The position numbers and the translations under genes were made by a program. A stretch of 64,000 nt of DNA from Octopus bimaculoides (taxonomy: Eukaryota): the NCBI RefSeq assembly GCF_001194135.2, contig NC_069000.1, forward strand, positions 35,490,690-35,554,689, read 5' to 3'. Below, in pieces: positions 20,801-63,907 of this stretch (its first letter is position 1; every line of letters starts with the position of its first letter). Under the pieces are notes generated by a model that made no database searches, had not been told where the DNA came from, and saw only the letters and a program-made list of their open reading frames with translations.

Positions 20801-21413
20801 CAGAAATTGGGGCTGGTGAAGTCGTAGAAATTCTCCACGAACCATTTCTGATTCTTTGCAGAAGTACGCCAAGGAGTTGAATGCTGCTGCTACATATAGG
20901 ACCTTCCAGCAACAACTCTCTCCAGCCAAAGTTTCACTACTGTCTCCACCACCTTCATATAATCATCAGAATTGTGCCTAAAACCCTGTTCAAAGATGTA
21001 AGGTAGTATGATGTTACCCTCGCTGCTGATGCACCCAAAAATCATCACTGTTGAGGGGATCTTGGTTTCCATGATGTCTTTGTCATATCTTACAGCCCTT
21101 GCAGTGTTCACAGAGCATTGAAGAGCAGTCATGATGTCGGCATTTTGTTACCTGGCATGACTCATCATGATACAAGAAACTCTCTTCCAATATTCAGATA
21201 GCTCCTACTCCTCCATATCTCTTTTACTCATTTCAGTCATTTGACTGGAGCACCACCTTTAGTCAAGCAAATCGACGCCAGGACTTATTCTTTGGATGCC
21301 TAGTACTTATTCTATTGGTCTATTTTACCAAACCGCTAAGTTATGGGGACGTAAACACACAGTTGTCAAGCAATGTTGGGAGGACAAACACAGACACACA
21401 TACACACATATAC

Positions 21414-21455
<42 letters not shown>

Positions 21456-22377
21456 GATGGGCTTTTTTCAGTTTCTGTCTACCAAATCCACTCACAAGGC
21501 TTTGGTCGGCCCAAGGCTATAGTAGAAGACACTTGCCCAAGGTGCCACGCAGTGAGAATGGACCCCGAACCATGTGGTTGGTAAGCAAGCTACTTACCAC
21601 ACAGCCACTCCTGCTTACTTTTTCGCAACTCCAACTTTAATCATGATGCTCTAATGCCATTGACTGTTCACCAAAACATGAAGCTGTTCCTGAAAAAATA
21701 GAAGACATGAAAATGTCATCAAATTTAAGTCAAACACCTTATATACATCCATATTCTCTCTCTATTTCTCTCTCTCTAGCTATCTATATGTCTATCTATC
21801 TCTATCCTTCTCTCTTTATGCTATCACCCTCCATTCATCGTTTTCTCCTATCAAACTATCATGCTTCTCTTTGTGAGCTGTCACAGCCTTTTCAACGCCA
21901 ATTAATTAATCATTCAATCAATCACATTATCCAATTCAAATCTCTCATCTCTTCTCCTTACTTATAGGCCATAATATTCAATGGCAGTGGATCCATGGCC
22001 TCTTTGAACAGGCAATATATGGTGGTAGAGTAGACAACACCTTTGACATAAGGGTGTTAGTCTCTTACCTGAAGACTTTCTTTGACAACCGGGTGTTGGG
22101 TGAACATGTGAGTGACAGACGCATTGGAAATCTGCAACTGCCAAATTCCTGCCAGTACAGAGTAAGCATCTCATCTTATGTTACAATGTTCTTCTTTTCT
22201 TTCTTTCTGATTTTTATGAACACATGAAGGGAACTCTGTTTACTAGAAATAGAAACCAAAACACTCTCAAATCAAGCTCTAGATACTGATGTGTTGAAAC
22301 AATGGTATAATTGTAAGGCATTTAATCTTTATTGAAGGTGTGCATCTGTATGTGCATGCACGTGTGTGTGTATTAGG

Positions 22378-25400: not shown

Positions 25401-26195
25401 NNNNNNNNNNNNNNNNNNNNNNNNNNNNNNNNNNNNNNNNNNNNNNNNNNNNNNNNNNNNNNNNNNNNNNNNNNNNNNNNNNNNNNNNNNNNNNNNNNNN
25501 NNNNNNNNNNNNNNNNNNNNNNNNNNNNNNNNNNNNNNNNNNNNNNNNNNNNNNNNNNNNNNNNNNNNNNNNNNNNNNNNNNNNNNNNNNNNNNNNNNNN
25601 NNNNNNNNNNNNNNNNNNNNNNNNNNNNNNNNNNNNNNNNNNNNNNNNNNNNNNNNNNNNNNNNNNNNNNNNNNNNNNNNNNNNNNNNNNNNNNNNNNNN
25701 NNNNNNNNNNNNNNNNNNNNNNNNNNNACAAATATTTAAGTGACTCTTGATGGAAACTGAAAAAAATAGTTCCCTGCCATACCAAGCTATAAAAAACTTA
25801 TCTAAAGGTGTAGGCATGGCTGGAGTGGTTAAAAAGCTCACTTTGCAACCACATGGTTTCAGGTTCAGTCTCAATGCACAGCACCTTGGGCAAATGTTTC
25901 TTAAAATAGCCCCAGGTCAACCAATACCTTATCAGTGCATTTGATAGACAGAAACTGTGTGAAACCCTGGCGGCGAGCTGGCAGAAACGTTAGCACGCCG
26001 GGCGAAATGCTTAGTAGTATTTCGTCTGCCGAGGTCGACTTTGTCTTTCATCCTTTCGGGGTCGATAAATTAAGTACCAGTTACGCACTGGGGGCAATGT
26101 GATTGACTTAATCCCTTTGTCTATCCTTGTTTGTCCCCTCTAAATTTAGCCCCTTGTGGGCAATAAAGAAATAAGAAACTGTAAGAAGCTTGCCA

Positions 26196-28401: not shown

Positions 28402-28806
28402 CGAGAGAAGTAGGAAAGTGGGTATGGATGGTGGGAGGGGGGACTTAAATGAGGTGAGAGAAAGAGTAAGAAAGAGAGAGAGAAAGAGTAAGAAAGAGTA
28501 AGAAAGAGAGAGAGAAAGAGATAAGTGTAGACTGAGGAGAAGAAAATGGAGGAGAGAGAGGGAAGGAGATGGAGTTATTGTAAAAACAAAAATGGACCTT
28601 ATCAACAGAGATTGTATTTAGTAATTTGAGATGCTTATTAATTTGATAGGGTTGTAGTATATATCTAGGGAGAGTGTTGAGATGGGGCTGCAGCTTTTGA
28701 CAGCTTTTCACACATATTGCAGTATACCACACTTCTATATATTGCCGCATCCATCAAAAAACCCCAATATGACATAGATTATGCACAATATTAATATCTA
28801 TATTAG

Positions 28807-29040
28807 GGCGGTGAGCTGGCAGAATCGTTAGCATGCCGTGCGAAATGCTTAGCAGTATTTCATCTACCATTACATTCTGAGTTCAAATTCTGCCAAGGTC
28901 GACTCTGCCTTTCATCTTTTCGGGGTTCGATTAAATAAATACCAGTTATGTACTGGAGTCGATGTAATCGACTTAGTCCCTTTGTCTGTCCTTGTTTGTC
29001 CCCTCTATGTTTAGCCCCCTGTGGGCAATAAAGAAATAAA
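28807..29040 (+). mobile_element. SINE family A
   Basis: Full-length copy with B-box gagttcaaattc. Confidence 0.88.
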
Positions 29041-40266: not shown

Positions 40267-42068
40267 AATATAATTATTATTACATTAAACAGGATCAGTA
40301 ATTGGCTATAAAAGAAAAATTGTAGCAGGAAACAATAAGATAGGAATGAGATAATAAACGAATAATTAGTTCTAAAGAGCAGTTAAAACCATTAGAAGGG
40401 ATCAACTAATTACAGAGCAATAAGTATCAAAAGAAATTAGAGAAGAATGATAGTAACAATAAGAAAGGAAGTACAATCGAAGGAAATACGTATGTTGATT
40501 TATAATATCTTATAACACAACACATAAGTTTAATAAACGGAATCCTCAAAAAGGTTTTATTTAATCTGGCGTAGGTAACGGATTAACAACTCATTACGTA
40601 TGTTAATTTGTCAAGATTTGCAGCTTAGAATTTGAAGTGCCTCTATGCCACGTAATTACAACTTCTCCACCCACTTTGTACAAGTGCTGTCCAAATAATT
40701 AAACACGAATTATAGTAATCTATATTCCTATTCTTCAAATCCAAATGAATTTTGTTCATGGAGTATTATGTACATGTTATTAAAAGAATGTACATAGTTG
40801 CTCTACCTCAACTTGAATTTTGATGTGACACTGATATAGTACTAAACCTTATCAGGTGTTAGGACTGAACATTTATATACTATATCCCTCCGGAGGCACT
40901 GGTTACTAAAAGGGTGACCATCTCTAACTCTTCAGTAAACACTGACTATGAGGTTTACTAAATAGTGTCAAATTAGTACTTGAATTATTATTAGAGCTAC
41001 TGTTAGGAAGAAGCATATAATCGATAGTAGCATTCCTGTTAGATCGATATGCGTTATTAACGGAAGAACTAGAGGAAAAAAAAAACAGTTATTATAATTA
41101 GAATCACAAATTTCTTATCAACAACGACTATAGTATCAACCAAATTAGTTGTGATGGAATATGAAAATTTAGAAGCGTGAATCCTTCGATCTGAGGTCAC
41201 CTTATCCATCCTTCACAGCTGGCACAAGTGTGTATATATGTGATTAGGTAGGGGCACACCGTGCCAGCTCGTTTCACATCCATATCACCAAGATAGTGGT
41301 AATGTGCAAGGGAATGGCCGGATGGATTCTGAGAACCTTCTATGACTAAAACGTTAAACCTCACCTAGAAACAACTATTAACAACATGATCAATTCTGCA
41401 TATTAAAAAAAAAATTGAACAAGGAAGTTTGCTCCTCAACCAGATGGATACGAGTTCAGTCTCACTGCATGGCACCTTGGGTAAGTGTTTTCTACTATAG
41501 GATCCTGGATAACCATCGATTCCAGATAAAGAGCTCTCAGTGTTAGAATCGATATCGCTTTTATTTTATCTGCTTTCGCTGGAAGATACGGATCGCATCA
41601 GTCAATGAAGGCACGAAATGTTCTTCAACGGGATCATTGATCTAGGTGAGATAGCACCTCAATCTCCCTCAACTCCCTGAAATCACATCCTACCGACGTT
41701 AACAAAAAAGGAAGAGAAGAAACTAGGAATATACAGGGTAATGTAGATCTAGACAAGAATGAACAACCTTTTTCGAGAAGCAGGCCGTATAGATCATCAT
41801 GAAGTGAGTCGCACTACTAAAAAAATTTTAAGTAACTTTTCGTTAGACGTGCCATACAGAAATTCCTGCGGGCCGCAGTTTTCCTATGACTGATCTAGAT
41901 ATCGAGAAAAAACCGGGATGGTTGCAAACGAAATGCCCTTAATCAAATATTTACTTAATTAAGGCCGGACTACGAGTTCAACTACTGCTACAACAATAAC
42001 GACAGCATAAACAATTGTGATATCTAAGTTCAACTTGGCAATAAACAAAATAACGTCTGGAATTTACG

Positions 42069-42209
42069 CTTATCTTCTTGCTTATATGGCTTCTTGCTAA
42101 AGGTCGTTCTTATCTTCTTACATGTACGCTTCTTGCTAAAATAACTTCAACAAAATTTCTACACGAGAAAGTGACGTCATAACAGTTGCATGACATCATG
42201 GCATCAGTT
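42069..42209 (+). promoter_or_regulatory. Candidate promoter: two GATA-type sites in a ~33-bp direct repeat, a CRE palindrome, a CRE-like site and an Inr-like TCAGTT
   Basis: cttatct at 42069 and 42109; TGACGTCA at 42172-42179; TGACATCA at 42191-42198; TCAGTT at 42204-42209, about 145 nt upstream of ATG 42353. Confidence 0.3.
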
Positions 42210-42352
42210 TTGATAATATGGACGATATTCAAACAGTCTCAACGTCGTTTGGAGGCAACCTCAACCATATAAGTTTTTGCAGTTGTTTCAACTGTTATTT
42301 GGTTTAACAAAGCATTTTGCGAGCTACCCAAAGGGAAAACCGAAAAGCAAAA

Positions 42353-42440
42353 ATGTCACATACGATGGTATACCCGATTCACCGACGCAGTGCTTCAGCG
42401 CCACCGCCAGTAACAAGAAGGGTGAAAAATACAAAAACAA
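42353..42440 (+). CDS. Candidate first coding exon of an OTU-like gene: MSHTMVYPIHRRSASAPPPVTRRVKNTKT (phase 1)
   Basis: aaaaATG context, in-frame stop upstream at 42305, donor aa|gtatgt. Phase 1 matches the acceptor at 52821. The sequence is non-repetitive and CpG-rich. Confidence 0.5.
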
Positions 42441-42489
42441 GTATGTACTGCCGGATTATAACCCCGTTCAATTCTATCCTTTATTTTCT

Positions 42490-42698
42490 ATCTTTTATTT
42501 GTTGTCGTCATTAGACTACGGCCATGTTGGGGCACCGCCTTGTGCAATTTTAATCGGATGAATCGACCCCAGTACTTCTTTATTTTTTACTTTTTTAAGC
42601 CTGGTACTTATTCTATCCGTCACTTTTGCCGAACCGCTAAGTTACGGGGACGTAACTGCACCAAAACCCGTTTTCAAGCCGTAATAGGGGACAAGCAT

Positions 42699-42751
<53 letters not shown>

Positions 42752-42885
42752 TACACAAACACACGACGGGCTTCTCTCAGTTTCCATCTTCCAAATCCAG
42801 TCACAATGCTATAGTAGAAAACACTTGCCCAAGGTGCCATGCAGCAAGGCTGAATTCGTAACCATCTGGTCGAGGAGCAAACTTC
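42490..42885 (-). mobile_element. SINE family B, about 50 nt after the candidate donor at 42441
   Basis: Family B layout with an internal (CA)n tract. Confidence 0.82.
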
Positions 42886-43016
42886 CTTGTTCAACTTTTT
42901 TTTAAATACGCAACGCAGAATTGACCACGTTTTCAATAGTTGCTAATTGTTTCTTTAAGTGCTGGTTGTTTTGGTTGGGGTGAGGTTTAATGTTTTAGTC
43001 AGAGAAAGAAAAAAAA

Positions 43017-43551
43017 AGTGCCAACGTCCTTTTTAAAGGTTTCCGTGACTGGGAGGAGAAAGAGAGGAGAGGAAGTTATTCCCAGACCTGAAACCTCATC
43101 TAAATACTTGTAACGGAATGGACTCCATCTAAGACACCTCAAATCTGTGTTGTGGTGTAAAACCGGGCGAAGTAGTAAGCCTACCATTCCAAAACATGAA
43201 CGGGATTCTACATAGTTTCCGTCCACATATTGTCATTCACGAGTTTTTGGTCGACTCGAAGTTATGATAGAAGGTAGATGACACTCGATCGAAGTGCCGC
43301 GCGATGGGATGGGATCTAATGCGGAACCCTGTTGTTGCGGAGAGAAGTCGTTAACCACACACCTGTCTTTTGGAGGACGTTAAAGAACTTAAGATTTATA
43401 TATAGAAATATCAGTCTTCGCAACCCAGACCTCAGGTGTCTTGGACGAAGTCCATTCTGTTGCTAGTATTTAGATTAGGACTCTGGTTGGAGAATGACTC
43501 CCTTTCTTCCACCTACCAGCCACGGAAACCTTTAAAAAGGACGTTGGCACT
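43017..43551. mobile_element. Non-autonomous DNA element with 36-bp terminal inverted repeats
   Basis: agtgccaacgtcctttttaaaggtttccgtgactgg (43017-43052) versus 43516-43551, one mismatch. Confidence 0.82.
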
Positions 43552-43844
43552 ACTCCTCTTTCTCTGACTCTCAGTAATGCAGTATAATGTGTACCTTTTA
43601 TGCAGACGCACACATACACACAGGCACGCATACATCCACACACACACACACACACACACACACATAAATACGTATGTGTGTCTATTACACACGTGGTCAC
43701 AAAAAGAAGTAAACTCGCGCACGATATATGCAGTCACGTGGAGAGGTATAAAAGCTCATACACGCACTTGCCCACACAATTGTATATCTCACTGACTACG
43801 CATGCACAAACTATATTTCTTATAACATCTGTGACACTCTCTAA

Positions 43845-44078
43845 GGCGGCGAGCTGGCAGAGACGTTAGCACGCCGGGCGAAATGCTTAGCGGTATTTCG
43901 TCTGCCGTTACGTTCTGAGTTCAAATTCCGCCGAGGTCGACTTTGCCTTTCATTCTTTCGGGGTCGATAAATTAAGTACCAATTACGCACTGGGGTCGAT
44001 GTAATCGACTTAATCCGTTCGTCTGTTCTCGTTTGTTCCCTCTATGTTTAGCCCCTTGTGGGCAATAACGAAATAGGT
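43845..44078 (+). mobile_element. SINE family A, near-consensus
   Basis: Full-length, CpG-rich copy. Confidence 0.9.
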
Positions 44079-44860
44079 NNNNNNNNNNNNNNNNNNNNNN
44101 NNNNNNNNNNNNNNNNNNNNNNNNNNNNNNNNNNNNNNNNNNNNNNNNNNNNNNNNNNNNNNNNNNNNNNNNNNNNNNNNNNNNNNNNNNNNNNNNNNNN
44201 NNNNNNNNNNNNNNNNNNNNNNNNNNNNNNNNNNNNNNNNNNNNNNNNNNNNNNNNNNNNNNNNNNNNNNNNNNNNNNNNNNNNNNNNNNNNNNNNNNNN
44301 NNNNNNNNNNNNNNNNNNNNNNNNNNNNNNNNNNNNNNNNNNNNNNNNNNNNNNNNNNNNNNNNNNNNNNNNNNNNNNNNNNNNNNNNNNNNNNNNNNNN
44401 NNNNNNNNNNNNNNNNNNNNNNNNNNNNNNNNNNNNNNNNNNNNNNNNNNNNNNNNNNNNNNNNNNNNNNNNNNNNNNNNNNNNNNNNNNNNNNNNNNNN
44501 NNNNNNNNNNNNNNNNNNNNNNNNNNNNNNNNNNNNNNNNNNNNNNNNNNNNNNNNNNNNNNNNNNNNNNNNNNNNNNNNNNNNNNNNNNNNNNNNNNNN
44601 NNNNNNNNNNNNNNNNNNNNNNNNNNNNNNNNNNNNNNNNNNNNNNNNNNNNNNNNNNNNNNNNNNNNNNNNNNNNNNNNNNNNNNNNNNNNNNNNNNNN
44701 NNNNNNNNNNNNNNNNNNNNNNNNNNNNNNNNNNNNNNNNNNNNNNNNNNNNNNNNNNNNNNNNNNNNNNNNNNNNNNNNNNNNNNNNNNNNNNNNNNNN
44801 NNNNNNNNNNNNNNNNNNNNNNNNNNNNNNNNNNNNNNNNNNNNNNNNNNNNNNNNNNNN

Positions 44861-45125
44861 CCTCCTCCTCATCATCATCCCGCTCCTCGTCCTCCTCATC
44901 ATCATCATCCCGCTCCTCCTCCTCCTCCTCCTCATCATCATCATCCCGCTCCTCCTCTTCCTCATCATCATCCCGCTCCTCCTCATCATCATCATCATCC
45001 CGCTCCTCCTCCTCATCATCATCATCATCCCTCTCCTCCTCCTCCTCCTCATCATCATCATCATCATCCCTCTCCTCCATCTCCTCCTCCTCATCATCAT
45101 CATCCCGCTCCTCGTCCTCCTCATC
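44861..45125. repeat. Composite (TCC)n(TCA)n-cccgc minisatellite
   Basis: Units of about 21-36 nt of the form ctcctcctc-atcatcatc-ccg, running into a gap. Confidence 0.9.
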
Positions 45126-45391
45126 CAGTATGTTGAAGCCACTATAATTCACAACCGTTACCATCTTGTATTTTGAGATATATCATCTGTGTGGTGACAT
45201 CGAGCAGCAGACGCCACTCGTAGTCAACGGAGTGAATTGGAACCACATAAAATGAAGTGCCTTACGCAAGGGCACCAAATGCTACCTGGTCCGGAAATCA
45301 AATCCGCCAGAACAACAGCCTAACAATTAGGTCAAAGGCCATTATTTGCCGAATATGTGTAGATATGTATATATATAATCACAACGCGTGA

Positions 45392-45705
45392 AGGTCTGTG
45401 GCTTAGTGGTTAGGGTATTCGGCTCGCGATTGTAAGGTCGTAAGTTCGATTCCCGACAGTGCGTTGTGTCTTTGAGCAAGTCACTTTGCTTCAGTTCGCT
45501 CACTTGGCAAAAATGAGTTATGGCTGTATTTCAAAGGGGGCCAGCTTTGTCACATTGTGAGTCACGCTGAATCCCTTTGAGAACCACGTTAAGGGAACGC
45601 GTGTCTGTGTATGTTCAGTCACTTGCGCGTTAATTTCACGAGCAGGCTGTTCCGGTGATCGGTTCAACTGAAATACTCGTCGTCGTAAGCGACGGAGCGT
45701 CAGTT
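45392..45705 (+). mobile_element. Family C-related SINE; an inverted partner lies at 46375-46650 (-)
   Basis: tRNA-like head gtggcttagtggttagg..gttcgattccc and shared 3' segment cacgagcaggctgttcc..gatc. Confidence 0.8.
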
Positions 45706-45869
45706 TAATCCCATCGCAGTTCTAATACAAATACCAGCTTGGTGCCTGGCGCGAATAAGACCACCAAAACCAACAAGATGAAAAGGGTTCGAAATGATAA
45801 CTAAACCGTATCGTCTGTCGTGCGGGTTAACATGTGACGCGTTCAGATCTTAAGAGAGGTCCTTTCAAA

Positions 45870-45935
<66 letters not shown>

Positions 45936-46819
45936 NNNNNNNNNNNNNNNNNNNNNNNNNNNNNNNNNNNNNNNNNNNNNNNNNNNNNNNNNNNNNNNNN
46001 NNNNNNNNNNNNNNNNNNNNNNNNNNNNNNNNNNNNNNNNNNNNNNNNNNNNNNNNNNNNNNNNNNNNNNNNNNNNNNNNNNNNNNNNNNNNNNNNNNNN
46101 NNNNNNNNNNNNNNNNNNNNNNNNNNNNNNNNNNNNNNNNNNNNNNNNNNNNCACACACACACACACCCACACACAAAATGCGTATCCCGGGACACCGAA
46201 GCAAGTTCAGGAGGGAAAAAACTGTTAGTGATTTTGGAACGATAGGACTCTAAGGCAGGGCGTACCCGAGAATTTACCCCCTGTGATCTTCTCAGGAATA
46301 GTGGACGGAGAAGATAGATGGATGTATATGCACACAAATTTTCTAGTTGCTTTACTAGCAAGCCCTATAACTGGTACTCCGTCGGTTACGACGACGAGGG
46401 TTCCAGTTGATCCGATCAACGGAACAGCTTGCTTGAGCACTCCACAGACACAAGTACAGAGAGATTCTGCCTGATACAGAATGTGGCAAGGCTGGCCTTT
46501 TGAAATGCAGATACAACTAATTTTTACCAGCTGAGTGAACTAGATCAACGTGAAATAAAGTGTTCTTACTCAAGGACATAACGCACTGTCGGGAATCGAA
46601 CTCACGGCTTTACAATCGAGAGTCGAATACCCTAACCACCAAGCCATGCGTGAAGCATTATAATAAGCTTTTTACTCAATGTCATTTAAGTATTGTCTTC
46701 CGTTTTTACTTAGGTTCGAATTTCTTCCAACCATCTTAGCTAACTCTCTCGTCCTTTCTTTTGCTTCGGTAGTTACTTTCCATTTCCATTCATCAAACCC
46801 GTCAACTTGTATTTATTGG

Positions 46820-47965
46820 GTTCAAATTTTGGCACAAGGCCAGCAATTTCGTGGGAGGAGGCAAGATGATTACTTCGACTCTAGTACTCAACTGGTACTT
46901 ATTTTATCAAACCCGAAAGGATGAAAAGCAAACTCGATCTCGGCAAAATTTAAACTCAGAACGTGGCCGACGGACGAAATACCGCTAAGTATTTTGCTCA
47001 GCGTGCTAACGATTCTGTCAGCTCACCGCTATATATTGTTTCAAATTTTGGCACAAAACCAGCAATTTCGGGGAACGTGGTAAGTTGATCACTTCAACCC
47101 TAGTACTCAACGGATACTTATTTTATCGACCTAGGCGAAATTTGAGCTTGAAATGTAAAAACAGACTAAATCTTTTCTGCTCTAGGCACAAGACCCGAAA
47201 GTTTTGGGGGGAGGGAACCAGTCGATTAGATCGACCCAGTACGCGACTAGCACTTAAGTTATCGATCCTGAAAGGATGAAAGGAAAAGTCGACCTCGGCG
47301 GAATTTGAACTCGGAACATAAAGACAGACGAAATACCGATTTCTTTATTACCCACAAGGGCTAAACACAGATAGGACAATACACACATGCGGGGACAATT
47401 AACACATGATAGAATGGAACAATGAAATTAAACAATGATGATGGGACGACCACGTTATTTCAATTATTTCAACAGTTCTCAATAGTTCCTTTCACAGTCT
47501 TCGATAGTTCTTTTCAAAATTATCTCAATTTATCCAAAATAAAACTAGTCACCATTTTATATAATATTTTATTTCCTCGTAGTTCACCACTGGAGCGCTG
47601 GATTCTAAATTCACCTNNNNNNNNNNCGCAGTGAGTAATATAACACGTTCGACCAGTAAACTCACAGAGCCGTTATATCGCTAAGCAGTTCGACCGGCGT
47701 GCTAACGTTTCTTATTTCTTATTTCTTTACTGCCCACAAGGGGCTATACACAGAGGGGACAAACAAGGACAGACAAACGGATTAAGTCGATTACATCGAC
47801 CCCAGTGTGTAACTGGTACTTAATTTATCGACCCCGAAAGGATGAAAGGCAAAGTCGACCTCAGCGGAATTTGAACTCAGAACGTAATGGCAGACGAAAT
47901 ACCGCTAAGCATTTCGTCCGGCGAGTTAACGTTTCTACCGACTCGCAGCCTTTCCCGCCAGCTCA
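46820..47965 (-). mobile_element. Cluster of four family A-type SINE copies in the same orientation
   Basis: Copies at about 46820-47030, 47035-47140, 47165-47380 and 47700-47965. Confidence 0.8.
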
Positions 47966-48829
47966 CTGACTTAATCATGTATACATTACCATTTGGTTTA
48001 TCCACAAAATTATTTACTGGTTCCAATAACGCATTTTCCTGTATGAACCTATTAAATTTTTCCTGCTTACTAGCTGACAATATATGCATCTATGACAACG
48101 AGCAGGTGCAGTGGAGGAGGGGGTCAACATAGCCATGTGGATTCTTTAGGGTTTGAATAAAAGAAACAAGCAAAATTTGAAGGAAATATTAGCCGTTTTT
48201 CATACTTTCTAAGAGTAAGTAAAAAGAAAATAACAATTGCTACCCTTCTGTAATAAGTTCCTTACCATTAATATGACTAGTAAAAAAAAAAAAAAAAAAC
48301 CTTATGCTCAGGTGCTGAAATTTGATTCTTCATTTGGTAAGGGCAAAAGGGAAACGACAAAATGCTAAACCTACCTTTGAACATTATAGTTTGACATTCA
48401 TCCTTCTTCATGCACAAGGCCTATAGTTCTAATCAGACACCATCAATTGCATTTCGAAAAGTGATGATGTAACTCTTCAATGTTGTAAAACAAAGAATTG
48501 TCAGGATAAAACATTAGAGTTAACGACTGTCAAATTTGGTGCATAAGAAAATCGGACATTTCATTCTTAATGACCAAATATATATTATACATATGTGCGA
48601 CGGCCCTTTTTTCGGTTTCCGTCTGCCAAATCTACTCACAAGACTTAGGTCGGCCCGAAGCTATAGCAGAAGATACTTTCCCAAAATGCCATTCAGTAGG
48701 ACTGATCCCGGAACCATGTGGTTGGGAAGCAGCTATTTGAGAACAAAAGTTTAATTTAATGGGAAAATATTTATTAGAGAAATGTATATATTTTTTTAAT
48801 AGAATTTGGTACACATACATACAGCAAGA

Positions 48830-49440
48830 GGTTATTCAACAAAACCGCTATCGGCCTCCATTACTGCCTTGATACAATTTCTGAAACGATTAAATGTGTT
48901 GAGCAAGGTGGTCGTCATTCATGTTGCTCTTAACGCCCCTAATAGCAGACATCAACGAGTCCATGCTTCTTGATCTCCCTCTCAACAACACCCTAGACGT
49001 AGTAGTCCGGTGGGGTGGGGTTCAATCAGATCTAGTGGACCAAATGGTAGGGATAACGTAATCATGAAAATTTTCGACCATCCTGGGTCATGCAGGCTGT
49101 GTGAGAGGGAGCTAAATGTTGCTGGAACACGTGCAGCATCCCCCGAGAAACTCTAGATCCAGCGCTTGACAACTGTCTCCATTGTTTTGGTGTAGGCTGC
49201 CACGTTGACCCTAAGACCTGGGAAAAAAGTCTGGTGATATAATATGGCCCTCGTTGCCCACAACCCTCATGAACATCACAGACGATGGATACTTGGTGTG
49301 TATAACAATGAAGACTTCAGTGGGACTCGCGTAAGGCCGTCTGGCATACCTCCTGTTCACTTTTTGATCTTGGATAAATGTCTTCTCATTTGAAAAAGAA
49401 CAGAGTATGTCGGCCTCCTTGGGGTGCTTGAGTTTTTTTG
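48830..49440 (-). mobile_element. Tc1/mariner (maT-like) transposase fragment
   Basis: KKLKHPKE...FSNEKTFIQDQKVNRR..., TKYPSSVMF..VVGNEGHI, TMETVVKRW and VFQQHLAPSHTA. Confidence 0.8.
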
Positions 49441-49602
49441 TTTTTGTTTTCTTAGCAAATGTAAAGGACTACCTCTTCCCTGAAATTGCAAGCCTTGTGC
49501 CAAAATTTGAAATCAGTATATACTGTCTGTGTATTGTTGGGTATGAGGCATGCGTGACAACGCCTGGACGTGAGTTGTGTGTTGATTGAGAGAGAGAGAG
49601 AA

Positions 49603-49643
<41 letters not shown>

Positions 49644-49645
49644 AC

Positions 49646-49699
<54 letters not shown>

Positions 49700-49907
49700 T
49701 AGAATGAATGTAAGACGGTGAGTGAAATCGTCTTTTATCACTTCTTTTCTTGAATCCTTTTGCCCCCAGGGAGANNNNNNNNNNNNNNNNNNNNNNNNNN
49801 NNNNNNNNNNNNNNNNNNNNNNNNNNNNNNNNNNNNNNNNNNNNNNNNNNNNNNNNNNNNNNNNNNNNNNNNNNNNNNNNNNNNNNNNNNNNNNNNNNNN
49901 NNNNNNC

Positions 49908-49974
<67 letters not shown>

Positions 49975-50039
49975 CATATATATATGTATACATATATATA
50001 CATATATATACATATATATACATATATATGTGTGCGTGC

Positions 50040-50085
<46 letters not shown>

Positions 50086-50394
50086 TTATGTACACTCATA
50101 TTTACCACACGCGAACATGTGTTTGTGAGTATATCCGGATTTTATTCAGAAACTACAAAACGAAAATCCACAAACCATGCTATTTCCCAAGGTAGAATTT
50201 TATATTAATTTTGATATATAAAGCAGAAATGTATTTTATTTCATTAAAAAATAATTTGTATTCCTACCAAAACAAATAAATATACATTTTCCCTTCAGTT
50301 ATCTTTCTGTCTTTGGTTTCTTTCACTTGATTCAGTCCATTGTTGTGTCGTAATTTCCGGTTGAAAGATTTCTTCTGAATTCATGTGAATATAT

Positions 50395-50520
50395 AGAAGG
50401 ACGAATAGACGGACGGACGGACAGACGGACGGACGGACAGACGGATGAACGGATGGAGAGACGGACAAACAAGCGAATAGATGGACAGACCACGGACGGA
50501 GAGATGGTCGGACGGATGGA
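50395..50520. repeat. (GACG/GACA/GATG)n tetranucleotide microsatellite
   Basis: Seen directly; retains many CpGs. Confidence 0.85.
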
Positions 50521-51236
50521 CATCACGGCTCTTATAATATAGATTTTATATTTCATGTTATGAATTTTAGTATCGTTATTTACAGCACTGAATTTTCCAC
50601 TTTCTTTAGAAAATAACATCGCTGTTTACACGTATAACAAGTGTTAGAACATAGAGATCATATTTTTAGTGGATGTCTTTGTTGGTTACGATCTTAACCA
50701 AATCCTAGAGCACAACAAATTTGCAGCTGTCACAAATATAAGGGACTATTTCTCAGCAGATGTCATCAACAAAACACTTAATTTCACCTTGCTCAGTCCA
50801 CTCAGCTGTCAAAATGAGTAATTCTGCGACGGAACGGCGTCCCGTCCAGGTAGGGAATACATACGCCATGAGAACAGGAAACCGGCCCTTATGAGTTAGT
50901 ATGACGCGAGAAGGGAACTTTACCTTTGAAATCAATGATTTGGGCCGTATAGTATTTATTGATGGTAAGCTACAGGATTCACAGATCAGAATTAGGTCCT
51001 TTGACCCTTGAGGCCCGTCGGCAACATTCCAGTATGCCCATGCCTTTAGATACAAGAGCAATAGTACTTGAAGCGTCTGAGAATGTCTACTCTAAAACTG
51101 AGTACGAAGGGCGATGTGATCTTTTTTATAGGAATATTTGCTCCAAGTTCATTGGAGATAATGAAATCAGTTCAGTGATAATTTATGCTCATTATGTGGT
51201 CGCAGACAACGTGAATTAGTAAAAATTTTCTTGGTT

Positions 51237-51630
51237 AGGAGTGGCTGTGTGGTAAGTAACTTACTTACCAACCACATGATTCCGGGCTCAGTCCCACTGC
51301 GTCGCACCTTGGGCGAGTGTCTTCGACAATAGCCTCGGGCCGACCAAAGCCTTGTGAGTGGACTTGGTAGACGGAAACTGAAAGAAACCCGTCGTATATA
51401 TGTATATATATGTATGTGTGTTTGTGTGTCTGTGTTTGTCCCCCCAACATCGCTTGACAACCGACGCTGGTGTGTTTATGTTCCCGTAACTTAGCAGTTC
51501 GGCAAAAGAGACCGATAGAATAAGTAGTAGGCTTACAAAGAATAAGTCCTGGGGTCGATTTGCTCGACTAAAGGCGGTGCTCCAGCATGGCCGCAGTCAA
51601 GTGACTGAAACAAGTAGAAGAGTAAAAGAG
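51237..51630 (+). mobile_element. SINE family B, full-length and near-consensus
   Basis: Complete head, internal (TG)n tract and gagtaaaagag tail. Confidence 0.9.
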
Positions 51631-52084
51631 GTCAGAACTTCGTATCTTGTCATCTAGTGTCACTTTTACCGCAATATACACATTGTATGTAACAGGAACA
51701 CAATAAAATTTATGTGTTTCGTTAGCAGCGCCGAACTCTAGTTCTTTTGTGAACGTGAAGAGAACAATGGTGGCTTACAACTCCAGTGTATTTTTTGTAT
51801 TAATCACTCCATGAAGGGTAGGATTTTAATGGTGAATCCTTTCTTCACGACGACACGACAATACTGACCAATTGTACCGACACATTAGACCTATTTGCAA
51901 TTATTGAATACGAGCTTTTATTTACTTGTATTGAGTTCTCATTAACATATGGCTGAGTGCTCTTCTCTCATGATCCTTTACCTATAATAACATTTGAAAT
52001 CGTTATTGCAATGCAAATAATTGTTAATTATGCAGTGTCCTTATTGATTAACTGAGGCGTGTCGTCCTTCGTCATATGCTTGTC

Positions 52085-52600
52085 TTTTTACAGTCAAATG
52101 TGGATTGAACTAACTCAGCGATCGTCTGGTGACTTCGTCATGCTAGCTACATTTTAATAATTTAGTGGACTTCATAGCTAAAATCCACTTTTTAGTTATG
52201 ATGTTTATGAGTTGAGTACAAAGTGGACTGACTCTGCGATGATCTAGTGTCTTAATCATTAAAGCTATCTATTTATAGACAAGTTGACTTAATCCGCTCT
52301 CTATTTATATAATTAAATGAATTGACCAAGCGAAAGTTTATTGTCTTATTTATGATAGCTAAGTGAACTCATCTAGTGAATGTCTTACGTCATAACCATG
52401 GTAGCGATATATTTATAATAAAGTGGATTCAACGATGAATAAATATCTTAGCTATGACATTTATTTTGAGTAGAGTAACCCAGTGAAAGTTTGATGATTT
52501 ACTCATGGCTAAATGGATTGACCCAGCGAAAATTTAATGTCATAGTCAAGATACCCATATATCTATATATCTAAGTGGACTGATTCAGTTTAGTAAATTT
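52085..52600. repeat. Degenerate tandem array with an AAGTGGAYTGAC(Y)CAGCGA-like core
   Basis: About 10 variants at roughly 45-65 nt spacing, ending about 220 nt before the OTU-like exon. Confidence 0.5.
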
Positions 52601-52820
52601 AGTATTTTAGTTATAGACCTGTGAAGTCATACGAACACAATTTGTGAAGTGATACGAACACTAAGCTTGTAATTTGACACAATAATCGACTCGACAGGCT
52701 GCTATCTTTTGTTTGTTTCGTCATTGTTATTTTTACTTTTTAACCTTTACATGAAATTAGAATATCTATAAATAATCATAGTATAACCGATGATCATTCG
52801 AAAACTTCTCTCCTTTTCAG

Positions 52821-53329
52821 ATCCATCAGCTGTAGCTAGTGCAAATCTCAAAACTGAAAACCGGAAATTGATTCCCGTCATTAAAGATGGCAACTCGTTT
52901 TTTCGGTCGGTAAGTTATCTCTTTTCAGGTCATGAAAGGAATTACATAAAATGGCGCAAGGTCATAATAGCTTTCGAATCTCTCTTTCCCGATCATGTTT
53001 TCCACACAGACATGATTGATAAGGCGGTTCGTTATGAACACGCTCAGAAATTATCAATCAACCGTGCGCCTGCCACTGAATTCGAACTTATTGCTTTTGC
53101 TACAATGGTACAATGCCAAGTTTACGTTTATGATATGATCAGTACAAAGCCCTACAGATTCGTTTGGCGTTTATACTTGCCGCGATTTGCTTGTGAACAG
53201 CTCTATAACAAAGGCTATTTGACTTTCTATCGTGAGCGAAACATTTATAGTCCGATCAAAGACAATCTTCAAGTATCAACCGATGAACAAGAACAGGCGA
53301 GACATCACCGATGGAGAAGTGTGTATTGA
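52821..53329 (+). CDS. Terminal exon encoding an OTU-like domain with substituted catalytic residues (putative pseudo-deubiquitinase)
   Basis: Strong acceptor cttctctccttttcag and an uninterrupted 509-nt frame. IKDGNSFFRSVSYLFSG aligns to the OTU Cys loop GDGNCLFRA, ATEFELIAFA to the WG..EL.A helix, and YRERNIYSPI to the His loop YRYGEHYDSV. AATAAA overlaps the stop. Confidence 0.7.
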
Positions 53330-53334
53330 ATAAA
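53329..53334 (+). terminator. Polyadenylation signal overlapping the stop codon of the OTU-like exon
   Basis: Sequence tat-TGA-ATAAAg gives AATAAA at 53329-53334. Confidence 0.4.
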
Positions 53335-53990
53335 GTAAACTTATAAGCAAGGTTTCGGAAGATTCAGCAAGTTTGAAAGCAAACAATACATATTTATATA
53401 TACATATATATATATATACATATATANNNNNNNNNNNNNNNNNNNNNNNNNNNNNNNNNNNNNNNNNNNNNNNNNNNNNNNNNNNNNNNNNNNNNNNNNN
53501 NNNNNNNNNNNNNNNNNNNNNNNNNNNNNNNNNNNNNNNNNNNNNNNNNNNNNNNNNNNNNNNNNNNNNNNNNNNNNNNNNNNNNNNNNNNNNNNNNNNN
53601 NNNNNNNNNNNNNNNNNNNNNNNNNNNNNNNNNNNNNNNNNNNNNNNNNNNNNNNNNNNNNNNNNNNNNNNNNNNNNNNNNNNNNNNNNNNNNNNNNNNN
53701 NNNNNNNNNNNNNNNNNNNNNNNNNNNNNNNNNNNNNNNNNNNNNNNNNNNNNNNNNNNNNNNNNNNNNNNNNNNNNNNNNNNNNNNNNNNNNNNNNNNN
53801 NNNNNNNNNNNNNNNNNNNNNNNNNNNNNNNNNNNNNNNNNNNNNNNNNNNNNNNNNNNNNNNNNNNNNNNNNNNNNNNNNNNNNNNNNNNNNNNNNNNN
53901 NNNNNNNNNNNNNNNNNNNNNNNNNNNNNNNNNNNNNNNNNNNNNNNNNNNNNNNNNNNNNNNNNNNNNNNNNNNNNNNNNNNNNNNNNN

Positions 53991-54049
<59 letters not shown>

Positions 54050-62557: not shown

Positions 62558-63691
62558 CACACACACACATATGATAATGGACTCTCCCGTGATTAGACGA
62601 CGTATGAGGGTTTGACAAATTCTTACCGAACAACCACACAGATGATTTTTTTATAGTGATCAAATGTTTTTTCTGTAGACATAAGCTCACCCCCTCCATC
62701 AGATCGACATTACCTGTACAGGTGCAACGGGCGCCACATGTCAGATGTCGAAATGATCGCTGAGCTTGAATATAACATATTATTAAACGATATATTACAT
62801 TAAGAAAAACAAAAAGACCGGTTAATGCAGCTTATGATTGATTCATTGACAAGTAAATGTGTAGATGAGCAGCAAATTTTAAGGAAAAGAATAAAAGGAA
62901 AAAAGAAACCGTTCAGAATAACATTGAGTGTTAAGTGGTTTAGTGTAAGAAGACCCAAGGGTATATTTGTCTCAGGGCCAGTGGTCTTTGGGAAGGACAA
63001 CCATTTGCACGGTTTGGGTGTATAGCAGAGGCTTGCGTATTTTCAGTTGGGTGATCTCAAATTTTTGTCTGGAGAAAAAAAAAAAGCCAGTAATTAAGCA
63101 GTTTGAGATACTACAAGGCAGTTATGTCAAACATGCAGCCCTTGAATCAAATACAAGTGCTGCTCGCAAGTGGCGTAGCTAAAGGTTTAGAAAGGGGAAT
63201 GCAAAAATCATTTTTGATAATAAAAATGCTGGCCTTGTGACTAAAGGGTTACTCCACATGACTCCGTAGGGAACATAGGGTCGGTTTTCTGCTTTCTCTG
63301 GTTTGTATATTCCTTTCTGGACGGAACGCCGGTCTGTCATAGGGTTACTCATTTTTGCCAGCTGAGTGGACTGGAACAACCTTAAATGAAATATGCTTTG
63401 TTCAAGAGCGCAACGCATCACACGGTCCGGTACTTTGCCAAACTTCTAAGTTATGGGGACGTAAACATACCAACATCGGTTGTCACGTGGTGGTGGGAGA
63501 CAAATACACACACAAACACACACGCATGCATACGCACATGCTCACACACATACACACATATATACAGTATGACCTCACTTTACGATGACCTGCTTTACAA
63601 GAACCTCGGTTTATGAGTTTTATTTTTCAAGTACAAGATCTGAAACAAGTAGTAAAAGATAAAAAAGAAATATATATATATATATATATAT

Positions 63692-63907
63692 ATTTCTTTA
63701 TTACCCACCGGGAGCTAAACATAGAGAGGGAAAACAAAGGGATTAAGTCGATTACATCGACCCCAGTGCATAACTAGTACTTATTTAATCGACCCCGAAA
63801 GGATGAAAGGCAAAGTCGACCTTGGCGGAATTTGAACTCAGAACGTAACGACAAACAAAATGCCACTGAGCATTTCGCCCGGCGTACTAACGATTCTGCC
63901 AGCTCGC
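63692..63907 (-). mobile_element. SINE family A, followed by a family B head (63920-64000, +)
   Basis: Family motifs seen directly. Confidence 0.85.

What the first reader, a model, noticed from the sequence alone, without database searches (positions are those of the whole stretch)
42353..53334. Candidate spliced gene for a catalytically dead OTU-like protein with a 14-3-3-type motif
Seen: a phase-1 exon (42353-42440) and a phase-1 terminal exon (52821-53329) join in frame into about 198 aa. The terminal exon has a strong acceptor, no disabling mutation and AATAAA over its stop. Known: OTU deubiquitinases use a D-G-N-C loop and an H-Y loop. Here the Cys position is Ser (TCG, 52895-52897) and the His position is Ile (ATT, 53243-53245). 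Each is at least two nucleotide changes from the catalytic codon, so a sequencing error or single recent hit is unlikely. The N-terminus carries RSASAP, a mode-1 14-3-3 motif (R-S-x-pS-x-P, Ser15). Inference: this may be a lineage-specific, phospho-regulated ubiquitin-binding or scaffold pseudo-enzyme. An intact frame among heavily decayed transposons hints at selection.
Basis: partly seen in the sequence, partly recalled or inferred. Interest (0 to 1): 0.75.

Follow-up and report, generated by a model that had tools for sequence, protein, structure and literature searches.

The report
Conserved catalytically dead OTU gene in octopus
This is a real octopus gene, already annotated as "uncharacterized", that encodes a deubiquitinase-like (OTU-fold) protein lacking its catalytic cysteine and histidine; selection has kept it intact in several species, so it is a modest new example of a known kind of "pseudo-enzyme".

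Summary
Exons 42353-42440 and 52821-53329 join in frame into 198 aa. This product is identical to Octopus bimaculoides XP_014776050.1 (LOC106873271, "uncharacterized"). All four assembly gaps lie inside the intron. A gap-free O. sinensis locus has the same two exons and collinear landmarks.

The protein gets no Pfam hit by itself, but it is an OTU domain:
- Profile-profile comparison with active OTUs gives 99.3% probability.
- An AlphaFold model (pLDDT 83) matches OTUD3, OTUD1 and OTUD5.
- Ser55 (TCG) sits at the catalytic Cys and Ile171 (ATT) at the catalytic His.

Ser55 and a non-His residue (Ile or Val) are kept in six full-length sequences forming two deep clades. dN/dS is 0.19-0.22 among octopods at useful divergence and 0.075 in the second clade.

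The closest active relatives are transposon-borne OTU domains (Helitron, Ginger-like, MULE-like), so a domesticated transposon domain is likely.

Not shown here:
- Transcripts or junction reads.
- Any role for RSASAP. The motif is seen only in two sister species.
- Ubiquitin binding.

A single-exon 179-aa reading from ATG 52790 is not excluded.

Verdict: a real gene and a new member of the pseudo-deubiquitinase kind, of moderate interest.

The parts
42090..42352 (+). Promoter-like and 5'UTR block upstream of exon 1. It contains a palindromic CRE-like TGACGTCA (42172-42179) and a TATA-like CATATAAG (42266-42273, 87 nt before the ATG).
   Evidence: There are 7 differences in 264 aligned positions against O. 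sinensis, compared with a 7.8% background (binomial P=4e-4). The stretch 42202-42317 has none. Promoter function is inferred, not shown.
42353..42440 (+). Coding exon 1 (phase 1 at its 3' end): MSHTMVYPIHRRSASAPPPVTRRVKNTKT plus the first base of codon 30. The donor reads CAA|GTATGT.
   Evidence: It is identical to the N-terminus of XP_014776050.1. The exon and donor are conserved in O. sinensis, 85/88 nt. AlphaFold gives low confidence for residues 1-29, consistent with disorder.
42386..42403 (+). RSASAP (residues 12-17), a match to the mode-1 14-3-3 consensus R-S-x-pS-x-P, with Ser15 at 42395-42397.
   Evidence: Read directly from the sequence. It is identical in O. sinensis. The chance rate is 2.4-4.4e-5 per residue. 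Function was not tested.
42441..52820 (+). Intron of about 10.4 kb (length uncertain). It holds four assembly gaps and several interspersed repeats.
   Evidence: Gaps listed. A collinear chain to the gap-free O. sinensis intron is.
52790..52792 (+). In-frame ATG inside the 3' end of the intron. It is the start of an alternative 179-aa single-exon ORF (52790-53329).
   Evidence: An ATG is also present just upstream of the acceptor in the other octopods and in the second clade. Its use is unknown.
52800..52820 (+). 3' splice site: a polypyrimidine tract and AG (GAAAACTTCTCTCCTTTTCAG).
   Evidence: It is conserved in three octopods. In the second clade an AG at the same codon phase is preceded by a CTAAT branch-point-like motif and a T-rich tract. 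This is conserved between two species whose silent sites are near saturation.
52821..53329 (+). Terminal coding exon, residues 30-198. The OTU-fold domain covers about residues 31-180 (52823-53272). The stop TGA is at 53327-53329.
   Evidence: Homology is shown. The fold is shown. Selection is shown.
52886..52897 (+). Cys-loop D52-G53-N54-S55. The Asp of the triad is kept and the catalytic Cys is replaced by Ser (TCG, 52895-52897).
   Evidence: It aligns to DGNC of OTUD3, of 80+ active relatives and of the active-only profile. Ser is encoded by TCG, TCC or TCT in different species.
53243..53245 (+). Ile171 (ATT) at the position of the catalytic His (N-H-Y/F becomes N-I-Y).
   Evidence: The position is Ile in all octopods and Val or Ile in the second clade.
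53329..53339 (+). Candidate poly(A) signals: AATAAA (53329-53334, overlapping the stop) and AGTAAA (53334-53339).
   Evidence: The first hexamer is absent in O. sinensis. The second position carries A[GA]TAAA in all three octopods. TAATAAA overlaps the stop in both second-clade species. Usage was not tested.

Best explanation
The locus is a genuine, apparently single-copy host gene: O. bimaculoides LOC106873271, with an orthologue in O. sinensis and relatives in further species. It encodes a small OTU-fold protein.

The protein keeps the Asp-Gly-Asn of the catalytic loop but has Ser in place of the nucleophilic Cys and Ile or Val in place of the general-base His. It therefore almost certainly cannot act as a cysteine deubiquitinase.

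The fold, and especially the former active-site loop, is under purifying selection. The protein most likely works non-catalytically. It could bind ubiquitin, a ubiquitin-like tail or a partner protein in the old substrate cleft, or it could act as a scaffold or regulator. Known pseudo-deubiquitinases work this way.

Its nearest active relatives are OTU domains carried by transposons, so it most probably arose by domestication of such a domain in an ancestor of these species.

The most likely gene structure has two coding exons. A short, disordered N-terminal exon follows its own conserved promoter-like block and is spliced across about 10 kb to the domain exon.

Shown: the gene structure is compatible with the sequence and matches the annotation; OTU homology and fold; the substitutions; the selection; the transposon-borne relatives.

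Inferred: loss of activity, a binding or scaffold role, the domestication route, splicing in vivo, and any phospho-regulation.
For: Identity:
- The product is identical to the annotated 198-aa protein.
- The O. sinensis orthologue has the same exons, donor and acceptor at a collinear, gap-free locus.

Homology:
- phmmer against 1.84 billion representatives finds 92 hits. Except for one bacterial cadherin-repeat protein that is a low-complexity artefact, the hits scanned with Pfam or traced to a source are animal OTU domains with DGNC...NHY/F.
- A cephalopod-only profile against an active-only profile gives HHalign 99.3%, E=2.8e-20.
- The family profile hits OTUD5, OTUD1 and OTUD3 in the PDB at E about 1e-21.

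Fold:
- The AlphaFold model has pLDDT 82.8, and mostly above 90 for residues 30-180.
- The best Foldseek matches are OTUD3 (E=3.8e-9, TM 0.80, rmsd 2.7 A), then OTUD1 and OTUD5.

Substitutions:
- Ser55 aligns to the Cys and Ile171 to the His in every alignment.
- Ser is kept through synonymous codon changes (TCG, TCC, TCT).

Selection:
- dN/dS is 0.225 and 0.186 for O. bimaculoides and O. sinensis against a third octopod (Fisher p=1e-5 and 1e-7).
- dN/dS is 0.075 at dS=0.87 within the second clade (p=1e-27), where the flanks no longer align.

Not a repeat:
- There is only one copy in the window. Both exons and their near flanks are unique within it.

Origin:
- Relatives carry Helitron Rep and Pif1 domains (P0006, P0013, P0020, P0081) or a Gypsy-type integrase as in Ginger1 (P0046). 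P0029 sits in a repeated MULE-like unit found at two loci.
- Pairwise bit scores are 57-63 to a Helitron-associated OTU but 8-19 to human OTUD1 and OTUD3, with OTUD5 scoring 8 or not at all.
- OTU domains in Helitron/Helentron and Ginger1 elements are documented (PMC4067079, PMC2836005).

Precedent:
- An OTU-class pseudo-deubiquitinase, OTULINL/FAM105A, is known (PMC7862380).
Against: - No transcript, junction-read or protein evidence could be obtained with these tools. The three gene models (UniProt, NCBI O. bimaculoides, NCBI O. sinensis) may not be independent of each other.
- Pfam's OTU model does not hit the protein directly, even at E up to 10.
- The AlphaFold model was driven by an alignment made mostly of active OTUs. 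With orthologues only, it failed (pLDDT 37).
- O. bimaculoides against O. sinensis alone gives dN/dS 0.47, which is not significant (p=0.18). The two species are too close.
- The species of the second clade are unidentified, so "conserved across cephalopods" is an inference.
- Transposon ancestry rests on similarity ranking, not on a resolved phylogeny.
- Ubiquitin binding is untested. The best-known OTU pseudo-enzyme, OTULINL, reportedly does not bind ubiquitin (PMC7862380).
- In the second clade a His sits one residue before the canonical position (G-H-V/I-Y).
Confidence: 0.6

Rival explanations
1. The gene is a single-exon unit. Translation starts at the ATG at 52790 and gives a 179-aa protein (MIIRKLLSFSD...). 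Exon 1 and its RSASAP motif are not part of the product, or they belong only to a minor isoform.
For: - The ORF 52790-53329 is complete by itself.
- An in-frame ATG lies just upstream of the acceptor in all three octopods and in both second-clade species.
- No exon-1 homologue or RSxSxP-coding candidate exon was found in the 10 kb upstream of the distant orthologue.
- About 180 nt upstream of exon 2 is still alignable among the octopods.
Against: - The ORFs from the unannotated assemblies were found by a caller that needs a start codon, which is an ascertainment bias.
- The ATG positions differ between clades: 31 nt before the exon boundary in octopus and 16 nt in the second clade.
- The sequence around them looks like a classical 3' splice site (CTAAT, T-tract, AG), with the AG at the same codon phase in both clades.
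- The only TATA-like box nearby (52767-52774) is too close to the ATG. A transcript started from it would begin after 52790.
- Exon 1 has its own significantly conserved promoter-like block.
- Existing annotations in two species use the spliced model.
Confidence: 0.2
2. The protein is still a hydrolase. It would use Ser55 as the nucleophile, acting as a serine-type OTU esterase or isopeptidase, with another residue serving as the base.
For: - Asp52, Gly53 and Asn54 of the catalytic loop are invariant.
- Second-clade proteins have a His immediately before the canonical position (G-H-V/I-Y).
- Independent Cys-to-Ser variants that keep the His exist among relatives: P0085 from Mytilus edulis, P0083 from Poeciliopsis prolifica, and P0016.
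Against: - The octopod proteins have no His at or next to the catalytic position (R/Q-N-I-Y).
- The neighbouring His of the second clade is Asn in octopods, so no common base is conserved.
- No Ser-nucleophile OTU is known to me (own knowledge).
Confidence: 0.07
3. It is a decaying relic of a transposon or virus OTU domain, an unprocessed pseudogene, whose open frame survives by chance.
For: - The window is rich in repeats and gaps, and Pfam finds nothing in the neighbouring ORFs.
- The closest relatives are transposon-borne.
- The catalytic residues are lost.
Against: - The frame is intact in six full-length sequences from two clades.
- dN/dS is 0.075-0.23, highly significant.
- The coding sequence is 97.2% identical between O. 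bimaculoides and O. sinensis, against roughly 89-93% in the flanks.
- Ser55 is kept through synonymous changes.
Confidence: 0.03
4. It is the coding part of a currently mobile, multi-copy element rather than a host gene.
For: Many relatives are multi-copy or transposon-encoded.
Against: - There is one copy in the window and the flanks are unique.
- The same collinear position is occupied in O. sinensis.
- Each protein cluster is seen on one contig per genome or run.
- No Rep, helicase, integrase or transposase ORF lies nearby.
- A whole-genome copy count could not be run.
Confidence: 0.03

Closest known systems
OTULINL / FAM105A (human OTU-class pseudo-deubiquitinase)
   Same: It has an OTU fold with a disrupted catalytic triad and is retained as a conserved gene. 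It is presumed to act through protein-protein interactions rather than catalysis (PMC7862380).
   Different: - It belongs to a different OTU subfamily: OTULIN-like, against the OTUD/transposon-type here.
- Its substitutions differ (Asp at the Cys position, with His retained).
- OTULINL has a membrane-localisation motif and is vertebrate.
- There is no evidence of common descent of the dead state.
Transposon-borne OTU domains (Helitron/Helentron accessory ORFs; Ginger1 transposase C-terminal OTU)
   Same: These are the closest sequence relatives found: 57-63 bits to a Pif1-helicase-linked OTU. They share the compact domain of about 150 aa and the motifs DGN-x-FFR, W-A/G-T-x-x-E-I and Y-x-W. OTU domains in these elements are documented (PMC4067079, PMC2836005).
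   Different: - Those domains keep all the catalytic residues (PMC4067079), are multi-copy, and are linked to Rep/helicase or integrase.
- This gene stands alone, appears single-copy and syntenic, has an intron, and has lost the Cys and His.
Human OTUD3 / OTUD1 / OTUD5 (canonical OTUD deubiquitinases)
   Same: They are the best structural matches to the model (TM 0.79-0.80 on the target for OTUD3 and OTUD1). The Cys-loop and His-loop positions align.
   Different: - Direct sequence similarity is only 8-19 bits.
- Those enzymes are active and have UIM/UBA or other extensions.
- This protein has Ser and Ile at the catalytic positions.
OTUB1 non-catalytic E2 inhibition
   Same: It is an example of an OTU fold doing useful work without hydrolysis, by binding ubiquitin and E2 enzymes (own knowledge; not tested here).
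   Different: OTUB1 keeps its catalytic triad, and its inhibitory function depends on an N-terminal helix that has no counterpart identified here.

Membership tests
OTU superfamily (Pfam PF02338, OTU-like cysteine protease) | Significant sequence homology to OTU domains | tested here: met
   - HHalign of the cephalopod-only profile against the active-only profile gives 99.3%, E=2.8e-20.
- phmmer gives E=1e-10 to 1e-7 against proteins that carry PF02338.
- The family profile hits OTUD5, OTUD1 and OTUD3 at E about 1e-21.
- Caveat: the protein alone gets no Pfam hit, even at E up to 10.
OTU superfamily (Pfam PF02338, OTU-like cysteine protease) | OTU fold | tested here: met
   - The AlphaFold model has pLDDT 82.8.
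- The top 50 Foldseek PDB matches listed are all OTU domains; the best is OTUD3 (4bou, E=3.8e-9, TM 0.80).
- The model depends on an alignment made mostly of active OTUs.
OTU superfamily (Pfam PF02338, OTU-like cysteine protease) | Catalytic Cys in the D-G-N-C loop | tested here: not met
   Ser55 (TCG, 52895-52897) is at this position in all six full-length sequences.
OTU superfamily (Pfam PF02338, OTU-like cysteine protease) | Catalytic His in the His loop (N-H-Y/F) | tested here: not met
   The position is Ile171 in octopods and Val or Ile in the second clade.
OTU superfamily (Pfam PF02338, OTU-like cysteine protease) | Acidic or polar third triad residue (Asp of D-G-N-C) | tested here: met
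   Asp52 is invariant.
OTU superfamily (Pfam PF02338, OTU-like cysteine protease) | Deubiquitinase or UBL-hydrolase activity | not testable with these tools
   This needs a biochemical assay.
Pseudo-deubiquitinases (pseudo-DUBs) | DUB fold with a disrupted catalytic centre | tested here: met
Pseudo-deubiquitinases (pseudo-DUBs) | Retained by purifying selection, that is, not a pseudogene | tested here: met
   dN/dS is 0.075-0.23 with p between 1e-5 and 1e-27.
Pseudo-deubiquitinases (pseudo-DUBs) | Experimentally shown lack of activity together with a non-catalytic function | not testable with these tools
Mode-1 14-3-3 ligands | R-S-x-pS/T-x-P sequence | tested here: met
   R12-S13-A14-S15-A16-P17. 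The chance rate is about 0.5-0.9% per 198 aa.
Mode-1 14-3-3 ligands | Motif lies in an accessible, disordered segment | tested here: inconclusive
   Residues 1-29 have pLDDT 46-71 and no secondary structure in the model. This is suggestive only.
Mode-1 14-3-3 ligands | Motif conserved in orthologues beyond close relatives | tested here: inconclusive
   It is identical in O. sinensis, but dS is only 0.05. Exon 1 is unavailable for the third octopod and was not found within 10 kb upstream in L006.
Mode-1 14-3-3 ligands | Ser15 is phosphorylated and binds 14-3-3 | not testable with these tools
   This needs phosphoproteomics or a pull-down.
Domesticated transposon-derived gene | Nearest relatives are transposon-encoded | tested here: met
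   Relatives are Helitron, Ginger-like and MULE-like. Bit scores are 57-63 against 8-19 for canonical OTUDs. No resolved tree was built.
Domesticated transposon-derived gene | Single copy at an orthologous position, without transposon termini or a transposase | tested here: inconclusive
   It is single-copy and unique in the window, collinear in O. sinensis, and no transposon domains are found in neighbouring ORFs. A genome-wide copy number could not be measured.

The most novel reading that the evidence does not exclude
A transposon (Helitron-type) OTU domain was captured early in cephalopod evolution. It was converted by Cys-to-Ser and His-to-Ile/Val changes into a permanent "substrate trap". 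The protein would read or shield ubiquitin (or ubiquitin-like) chains, or block an E2/E3 enzyme. In octopods it would be switched by phosphorylation of Ser15 and 14-3-3 binding on a newly acquired N-terminal exon.
Probability: 0.15. Interest if true: 0.55.

Novelty: new member of a known kind. Interest (0 to 1): 0.35.

Why it matters
Pseudo-enzymes of the ubiquitin system are recognised regulators, but few OTU-class examples are known, and those I know of are vertebrate. If the inferences hold, this gene would add three things. It would be an invertebrate example that has been under strong purifying selection for a long time. It would have a naturally fixed Cys-to-Ser active site with an otherwise invariant catalytic loop, which is convenient for asking what a dead OTU cleft binds. 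It would also be a probable case of a transposon accessory domain recruited as a host gene. It also gives a function-level annotation to a protein currently labelled "uncharacterized" that Pfam misses. The impact is limited, because the kind of thing is known and nothing is yet known of its expression or partners.

Tried and rejected
- Pfam scan of the 179-aa and 198-aa products: no family at E up to 10. Homology needed PDB phmmer, the representative search and profiles.
- First AlphaFold run with only three orthologues: pLDDT 37, unusable. It was repeated with a 66-sequence alignment.
- Hit P0005 (1908 aa, E=1.6e-47) is a bacterial cadherin-repeat protein that matches the low-complexity N-terminus in 15 stretches. 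I discarded it as an artefact.
- Search for exon 1 in the distant orthologue locus L006 by tblastn, blastn and a scan for ATG-to-phase-1-donor exons or RSxSxP: nothing convincing. Only 10 kb upstream was available.
- Literature searches for the gene, protein and run accessions: no papers. The species behind the Logan and ENA contigs, and whether those runs are DNA or RNA, therefore stay unknown.
- Logan contigs carry intron-side sequence and extend past the poly(A) hexamer. They look genomic and give no splice evidence.
- TATAAATA at 52767-52774 as a promoter for the 179-aa ORF: rejected on geometry, because it lies only 23 nt before the ATG.
- An apparently conserved intron element at 52640-52820 is 87% identical to the third octopod, against about 81% expected at dS=0.22. 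This is only slightly above neutral, so I do not claim an element.
- Rfam and tRNA scans of the whole window: nothing.
- Pfam on nine other gap-free ORFs in the window: nothing.
- A formal phylogeny was not attempted. The domain is short, identity is 20-30%, and no tree software beyond distance methods was available. I used bit-score ranking instead.

Full report
**Observation**

- Exon 1 begins with ATG at 42353 and ends at 42440, followed by GTATGT. It codes for MSHTMVYPIHRRSASAPPPVTRRVKNTKT.
- The second exon follows TTCTCTCCTTTTCAG at 52821 and runs to the TGA at 53327-53329.
- Joined, the 88 + 509 nt give a 198-aa product with no internal stop.
- TCG at 52895-52897 is Ser55 within D-G-N-S. 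ATT at 53243-53245 is Ile171 within N-I-Y. Both are two substitutions away from Cys or His codons.
- AATAAA lies at 53329-53334.

**Assembly gaps (the program's question)**

- All four gaps inside the finding (44079-44860, 45936-46152, 47617-47626, 49775-49906) lie in the intron. The reading frame does not depend on them; only the intron length does.
- A gap-free O. sinensis locus (L001, no N) carries the same two exons at 10001-10088 and 24707-25215, with the same donor and acceptor.
- A collinear chain of matches links the two species on both sides of the 44079 and 49775 gaps.
- The other two gaps lie in a 2.7-kb stretch that O. sinensis lacks, so they cannot be checked.

**The gene is already annotated**

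- The 198-aa product is identical to XP_014776050.1 / A0A0L8H2I2, "uncharacterized protein LOC106873271" of Octopus bimaculoides.
- O. sinensis has XP_036366708.1, 95% identical.
- The spliced model is therefore the existing gene model, not a new discovery.
- No paper in the library mentions these identifiers.

**What the protein is**

- Pfam gives no hit to it.
- phmmer against PDB sequences gives only OTUD3 at E=0.0047, with DGNS aligned to DGNC.
- An exhaustive phmmer search of 1.84 billion representatives gives 92 hits. One is a low-complexity artefact (P0005). Those scanned with Pfam or traced to a source are animal proteins with Pfam OTU domains, and their motifs are DGNC...NHY/F.
- A profile of the cephalopod sequences alone matches a profile of active relatives alone with 99.3% probability (E=2.8e-20). 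This places Ser55 on the Cys and Ile171 on the His.
- The family profile hits OTUD5, OTUD1 and OTUD3 in the PDB at about 1e-21.
- With a 66-sequence alignment, AlphaFold gives pLDDT 82.8, mostly above 90 for residues 30-180. The exon-1 segment gets low confidence.
- The top 50 Foldseek matches listed are all OTU domains, led by OTUD3 (E=3.8e-9, TM 0.80).
- The fold result leans on an alignment of active OTUs. An orthologue-only run failed.

**Conservation and selection**

- A third octopod is represented by Logan contigs L002-L005 (species unknown) and has the same domain, 87% identical.
- A second, distant clade is 51-56% identical to octopus. It comprises P0004, P0173 and P0095, plus a 130-aa fragment P0172 that lacks the Cys loop. 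Its loci are L006-L009 and the species are unknown. It also has D-G-N-S and Val or Ile at the His position.
- Ser is encoded by TCG, TCC and TCT in different species.
- dN/dS by comparison:

| Comparison | dN/dS | Fisher p |
|---|---|---|
| O. bimaculoides vs O. sinensis (dS 0.05) | 0.47 | 0.18 (not significant) |
| O. bimaculoides vs third octopod | 0.225 | 1e-5 |
| O. sinensis vs third octopod | 0.186 | 1e-7 |
| Within the second clade (dS 0.87) | 0.075 | 1e-27 |

- In the second clade the flanks are unalignable apart from about 30 nt at each end of the exon.
- This rules out a decaying relic.

**Gene structure**

Evidence for splicing is indirect:
- The annotations use the spliced model.
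- The donor and acceptor are conserved in O. sinensis.
- In the second clade the AG falls at the same codon phase. It is preceded by a conserved CTAAT and T-tract, although silent sites there are near saturation.
- A block upstream of exon 1 (42090-42352) has 7 differences in 264 positions against a 7.8% background (P=4e-4). It contains TGACGTCA at 42172 and CATATAAG at 42266.

Against certainty:
- An in-frame ATG at 52790 gives a self-contained 179-aa ORF. Similar ATGs occur in the other species.
- No exon 1 was found upstream in L006.
- No transcript data could be reached.

I put the two-exon model at about 0.75.

**The 3' end**

- AATAAA over the stop is specific to O. bimaculoides among the octopods.
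- An A[GA]TAAA hexamer five bases further on is shared by all three octopods.
- TAATAAA overlaps the stop in both second-clade species.
- A very short 3'UTR is therefore plausible.

**Origin**

- Multi-domain relatives are Helitron proteins with Helitron_like_N or PIF1-type helicase domains plus OTU (P0006, P0013, P0020, P0081), and an integrase-OTU fusion like Ginger1 (P0046).
- P0029 sits in a repeated unit next to a ZSWIM/MULE-type domain at two loci.
- Bit scores to a Helitron-linked OTU are 57-63. Scores to human OTUD1 and OTUD3 are 8-19, and OTUD5 scores 8 or not at all.
- OTU domains in these elements are documented, with all catalytic residues kept (PMC4067079, PMC2836005).
- The octopus gene is unique in the window, syntenic, and has no transposon domains nearby.
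- Domestication is the best reading, but it is inferred.

**Mechanism**

- Without the Cys and His, cysteine-protease chemistry is excluded.
- The former catalytic loop VIKDGNSFFR is invariant across both clades. This suggests that the cleft is still used, most simply for binding.
- The closest functional precedent is the OTU-class pseudo-deubiquitinase OTULINL/FAM105A (PMC7862380).
- Ubiquitin binding, a scaffold role and phospho-regulation remain untested.
- RSASAP matches the 14-3-3 mode-1 consensus and lies in a probably disordered segment. Such a match is expected in about 0.5-0.9% of proteins of this size, and its conservation is uninformative so far.

**Verdict**

This is a real gene and a new member of a known kind (pseudo-deubiquitinase, probably a domesticated transposon domain). 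Interest is moderate to low.

Noticed in passing
window 42090-42352: A block upstream of exon 1 is much more conserved with O. sinensis than its surroundings, with no differences at all in 42202-42317. It contains a perfect palindromic CRE-like TGACGTCA (42172-42179), a TATA-like CATATAAG (42266-42273), and short direct repeats of CTTCTTGCT around 42060-42140.
   Followed up: partly
window 52790-52792; L001 about 24676; L002 345; L006 10001; L007 227: An in-frame ATG lies a few codons upstream of the splice acceptor in every species examined. The domain exon is therefore also a complete ORF by itself. This could be chance plus ORF-caller bias, or an alternative start for an intron-retaining or internally initiated transcript.
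   Followed up: partly
window 43842-44075 and at least 12 other places (for example 47720-47952, 2158-2392, 28804-29038, 63691-63907, 25969-26173): A SINE-like repeat family of about 235 nt, 78-91% identical between copies and in both orientations. It is also present several times in the O. sinensis locus L001.
   Followed up: no
window 51237-51630 and copies at 12096-12470, 21219-21612, 23731-24062, 42491-42870 and others: A second interspersed repeat family of about 400 nt, 65-92% identical. One copy starts about 50 nt after the exon 1 donor. Copies also occur in L001.
   Followed up: no
window 53386-53426 and 53991-54047; L001 25270-25670: The assembly gap after the gene is bounded by (TA)n and (CA)n microsatellites. 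In O. sinensis the corresponding roughly 320 nt is microsatellite-rich and contains an AATAAA (about L001 25476). A more distal poly(A) site could therefore be hidden in the gap.
   Followed up: partly
window 52620-52661; L002 about 130-260: The motif TGTGAAGT[C/G]ATACGAACAC occurs twice, 23 nt apart, in the intron about 160-200 nt before exon 2. The third octopod has three copies. The surrounding 180 nt is only slightly more conserved than the neutral expectation.
   Followed up: partly
window 45270-48015 versus L001 12598-12622; L001 17481-22356 versus window 50758-50768: There are large lineage-specific insertions or deletions in the intron. About 2.7 kb is present only in the window, and about 4.9 kb is present only in O. 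sinensis.
   Followed up: no
proteins P0085 (Mytilus edulis CAG2223483.1), P0083 (Poeciliopsis prolifica XP_054876799.1), P0016: Independent Cys-to-Ser replacements (DGNS or DSNS) occur in other animal OTU relatives that still keep the His-loop His. This raises the question of whether Ser-nucleophile or repeatedly inactivated OTUs are common in this family.
   Followed up: no
L010 3673-4362 (-) and 10001-10636 (+), Argonauta hians: Two nearby single-exon ORFs (229 and 211 aa) have Pfam OTU hits, and one is named "OTUD3-like". They sit next to a thymidine-phosphorylase-like gene. These are small standalone OTU genes of the same family in another octopod; P0103 at least keeps the DGNC Cys (invariant in A7).
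   Followed up: no
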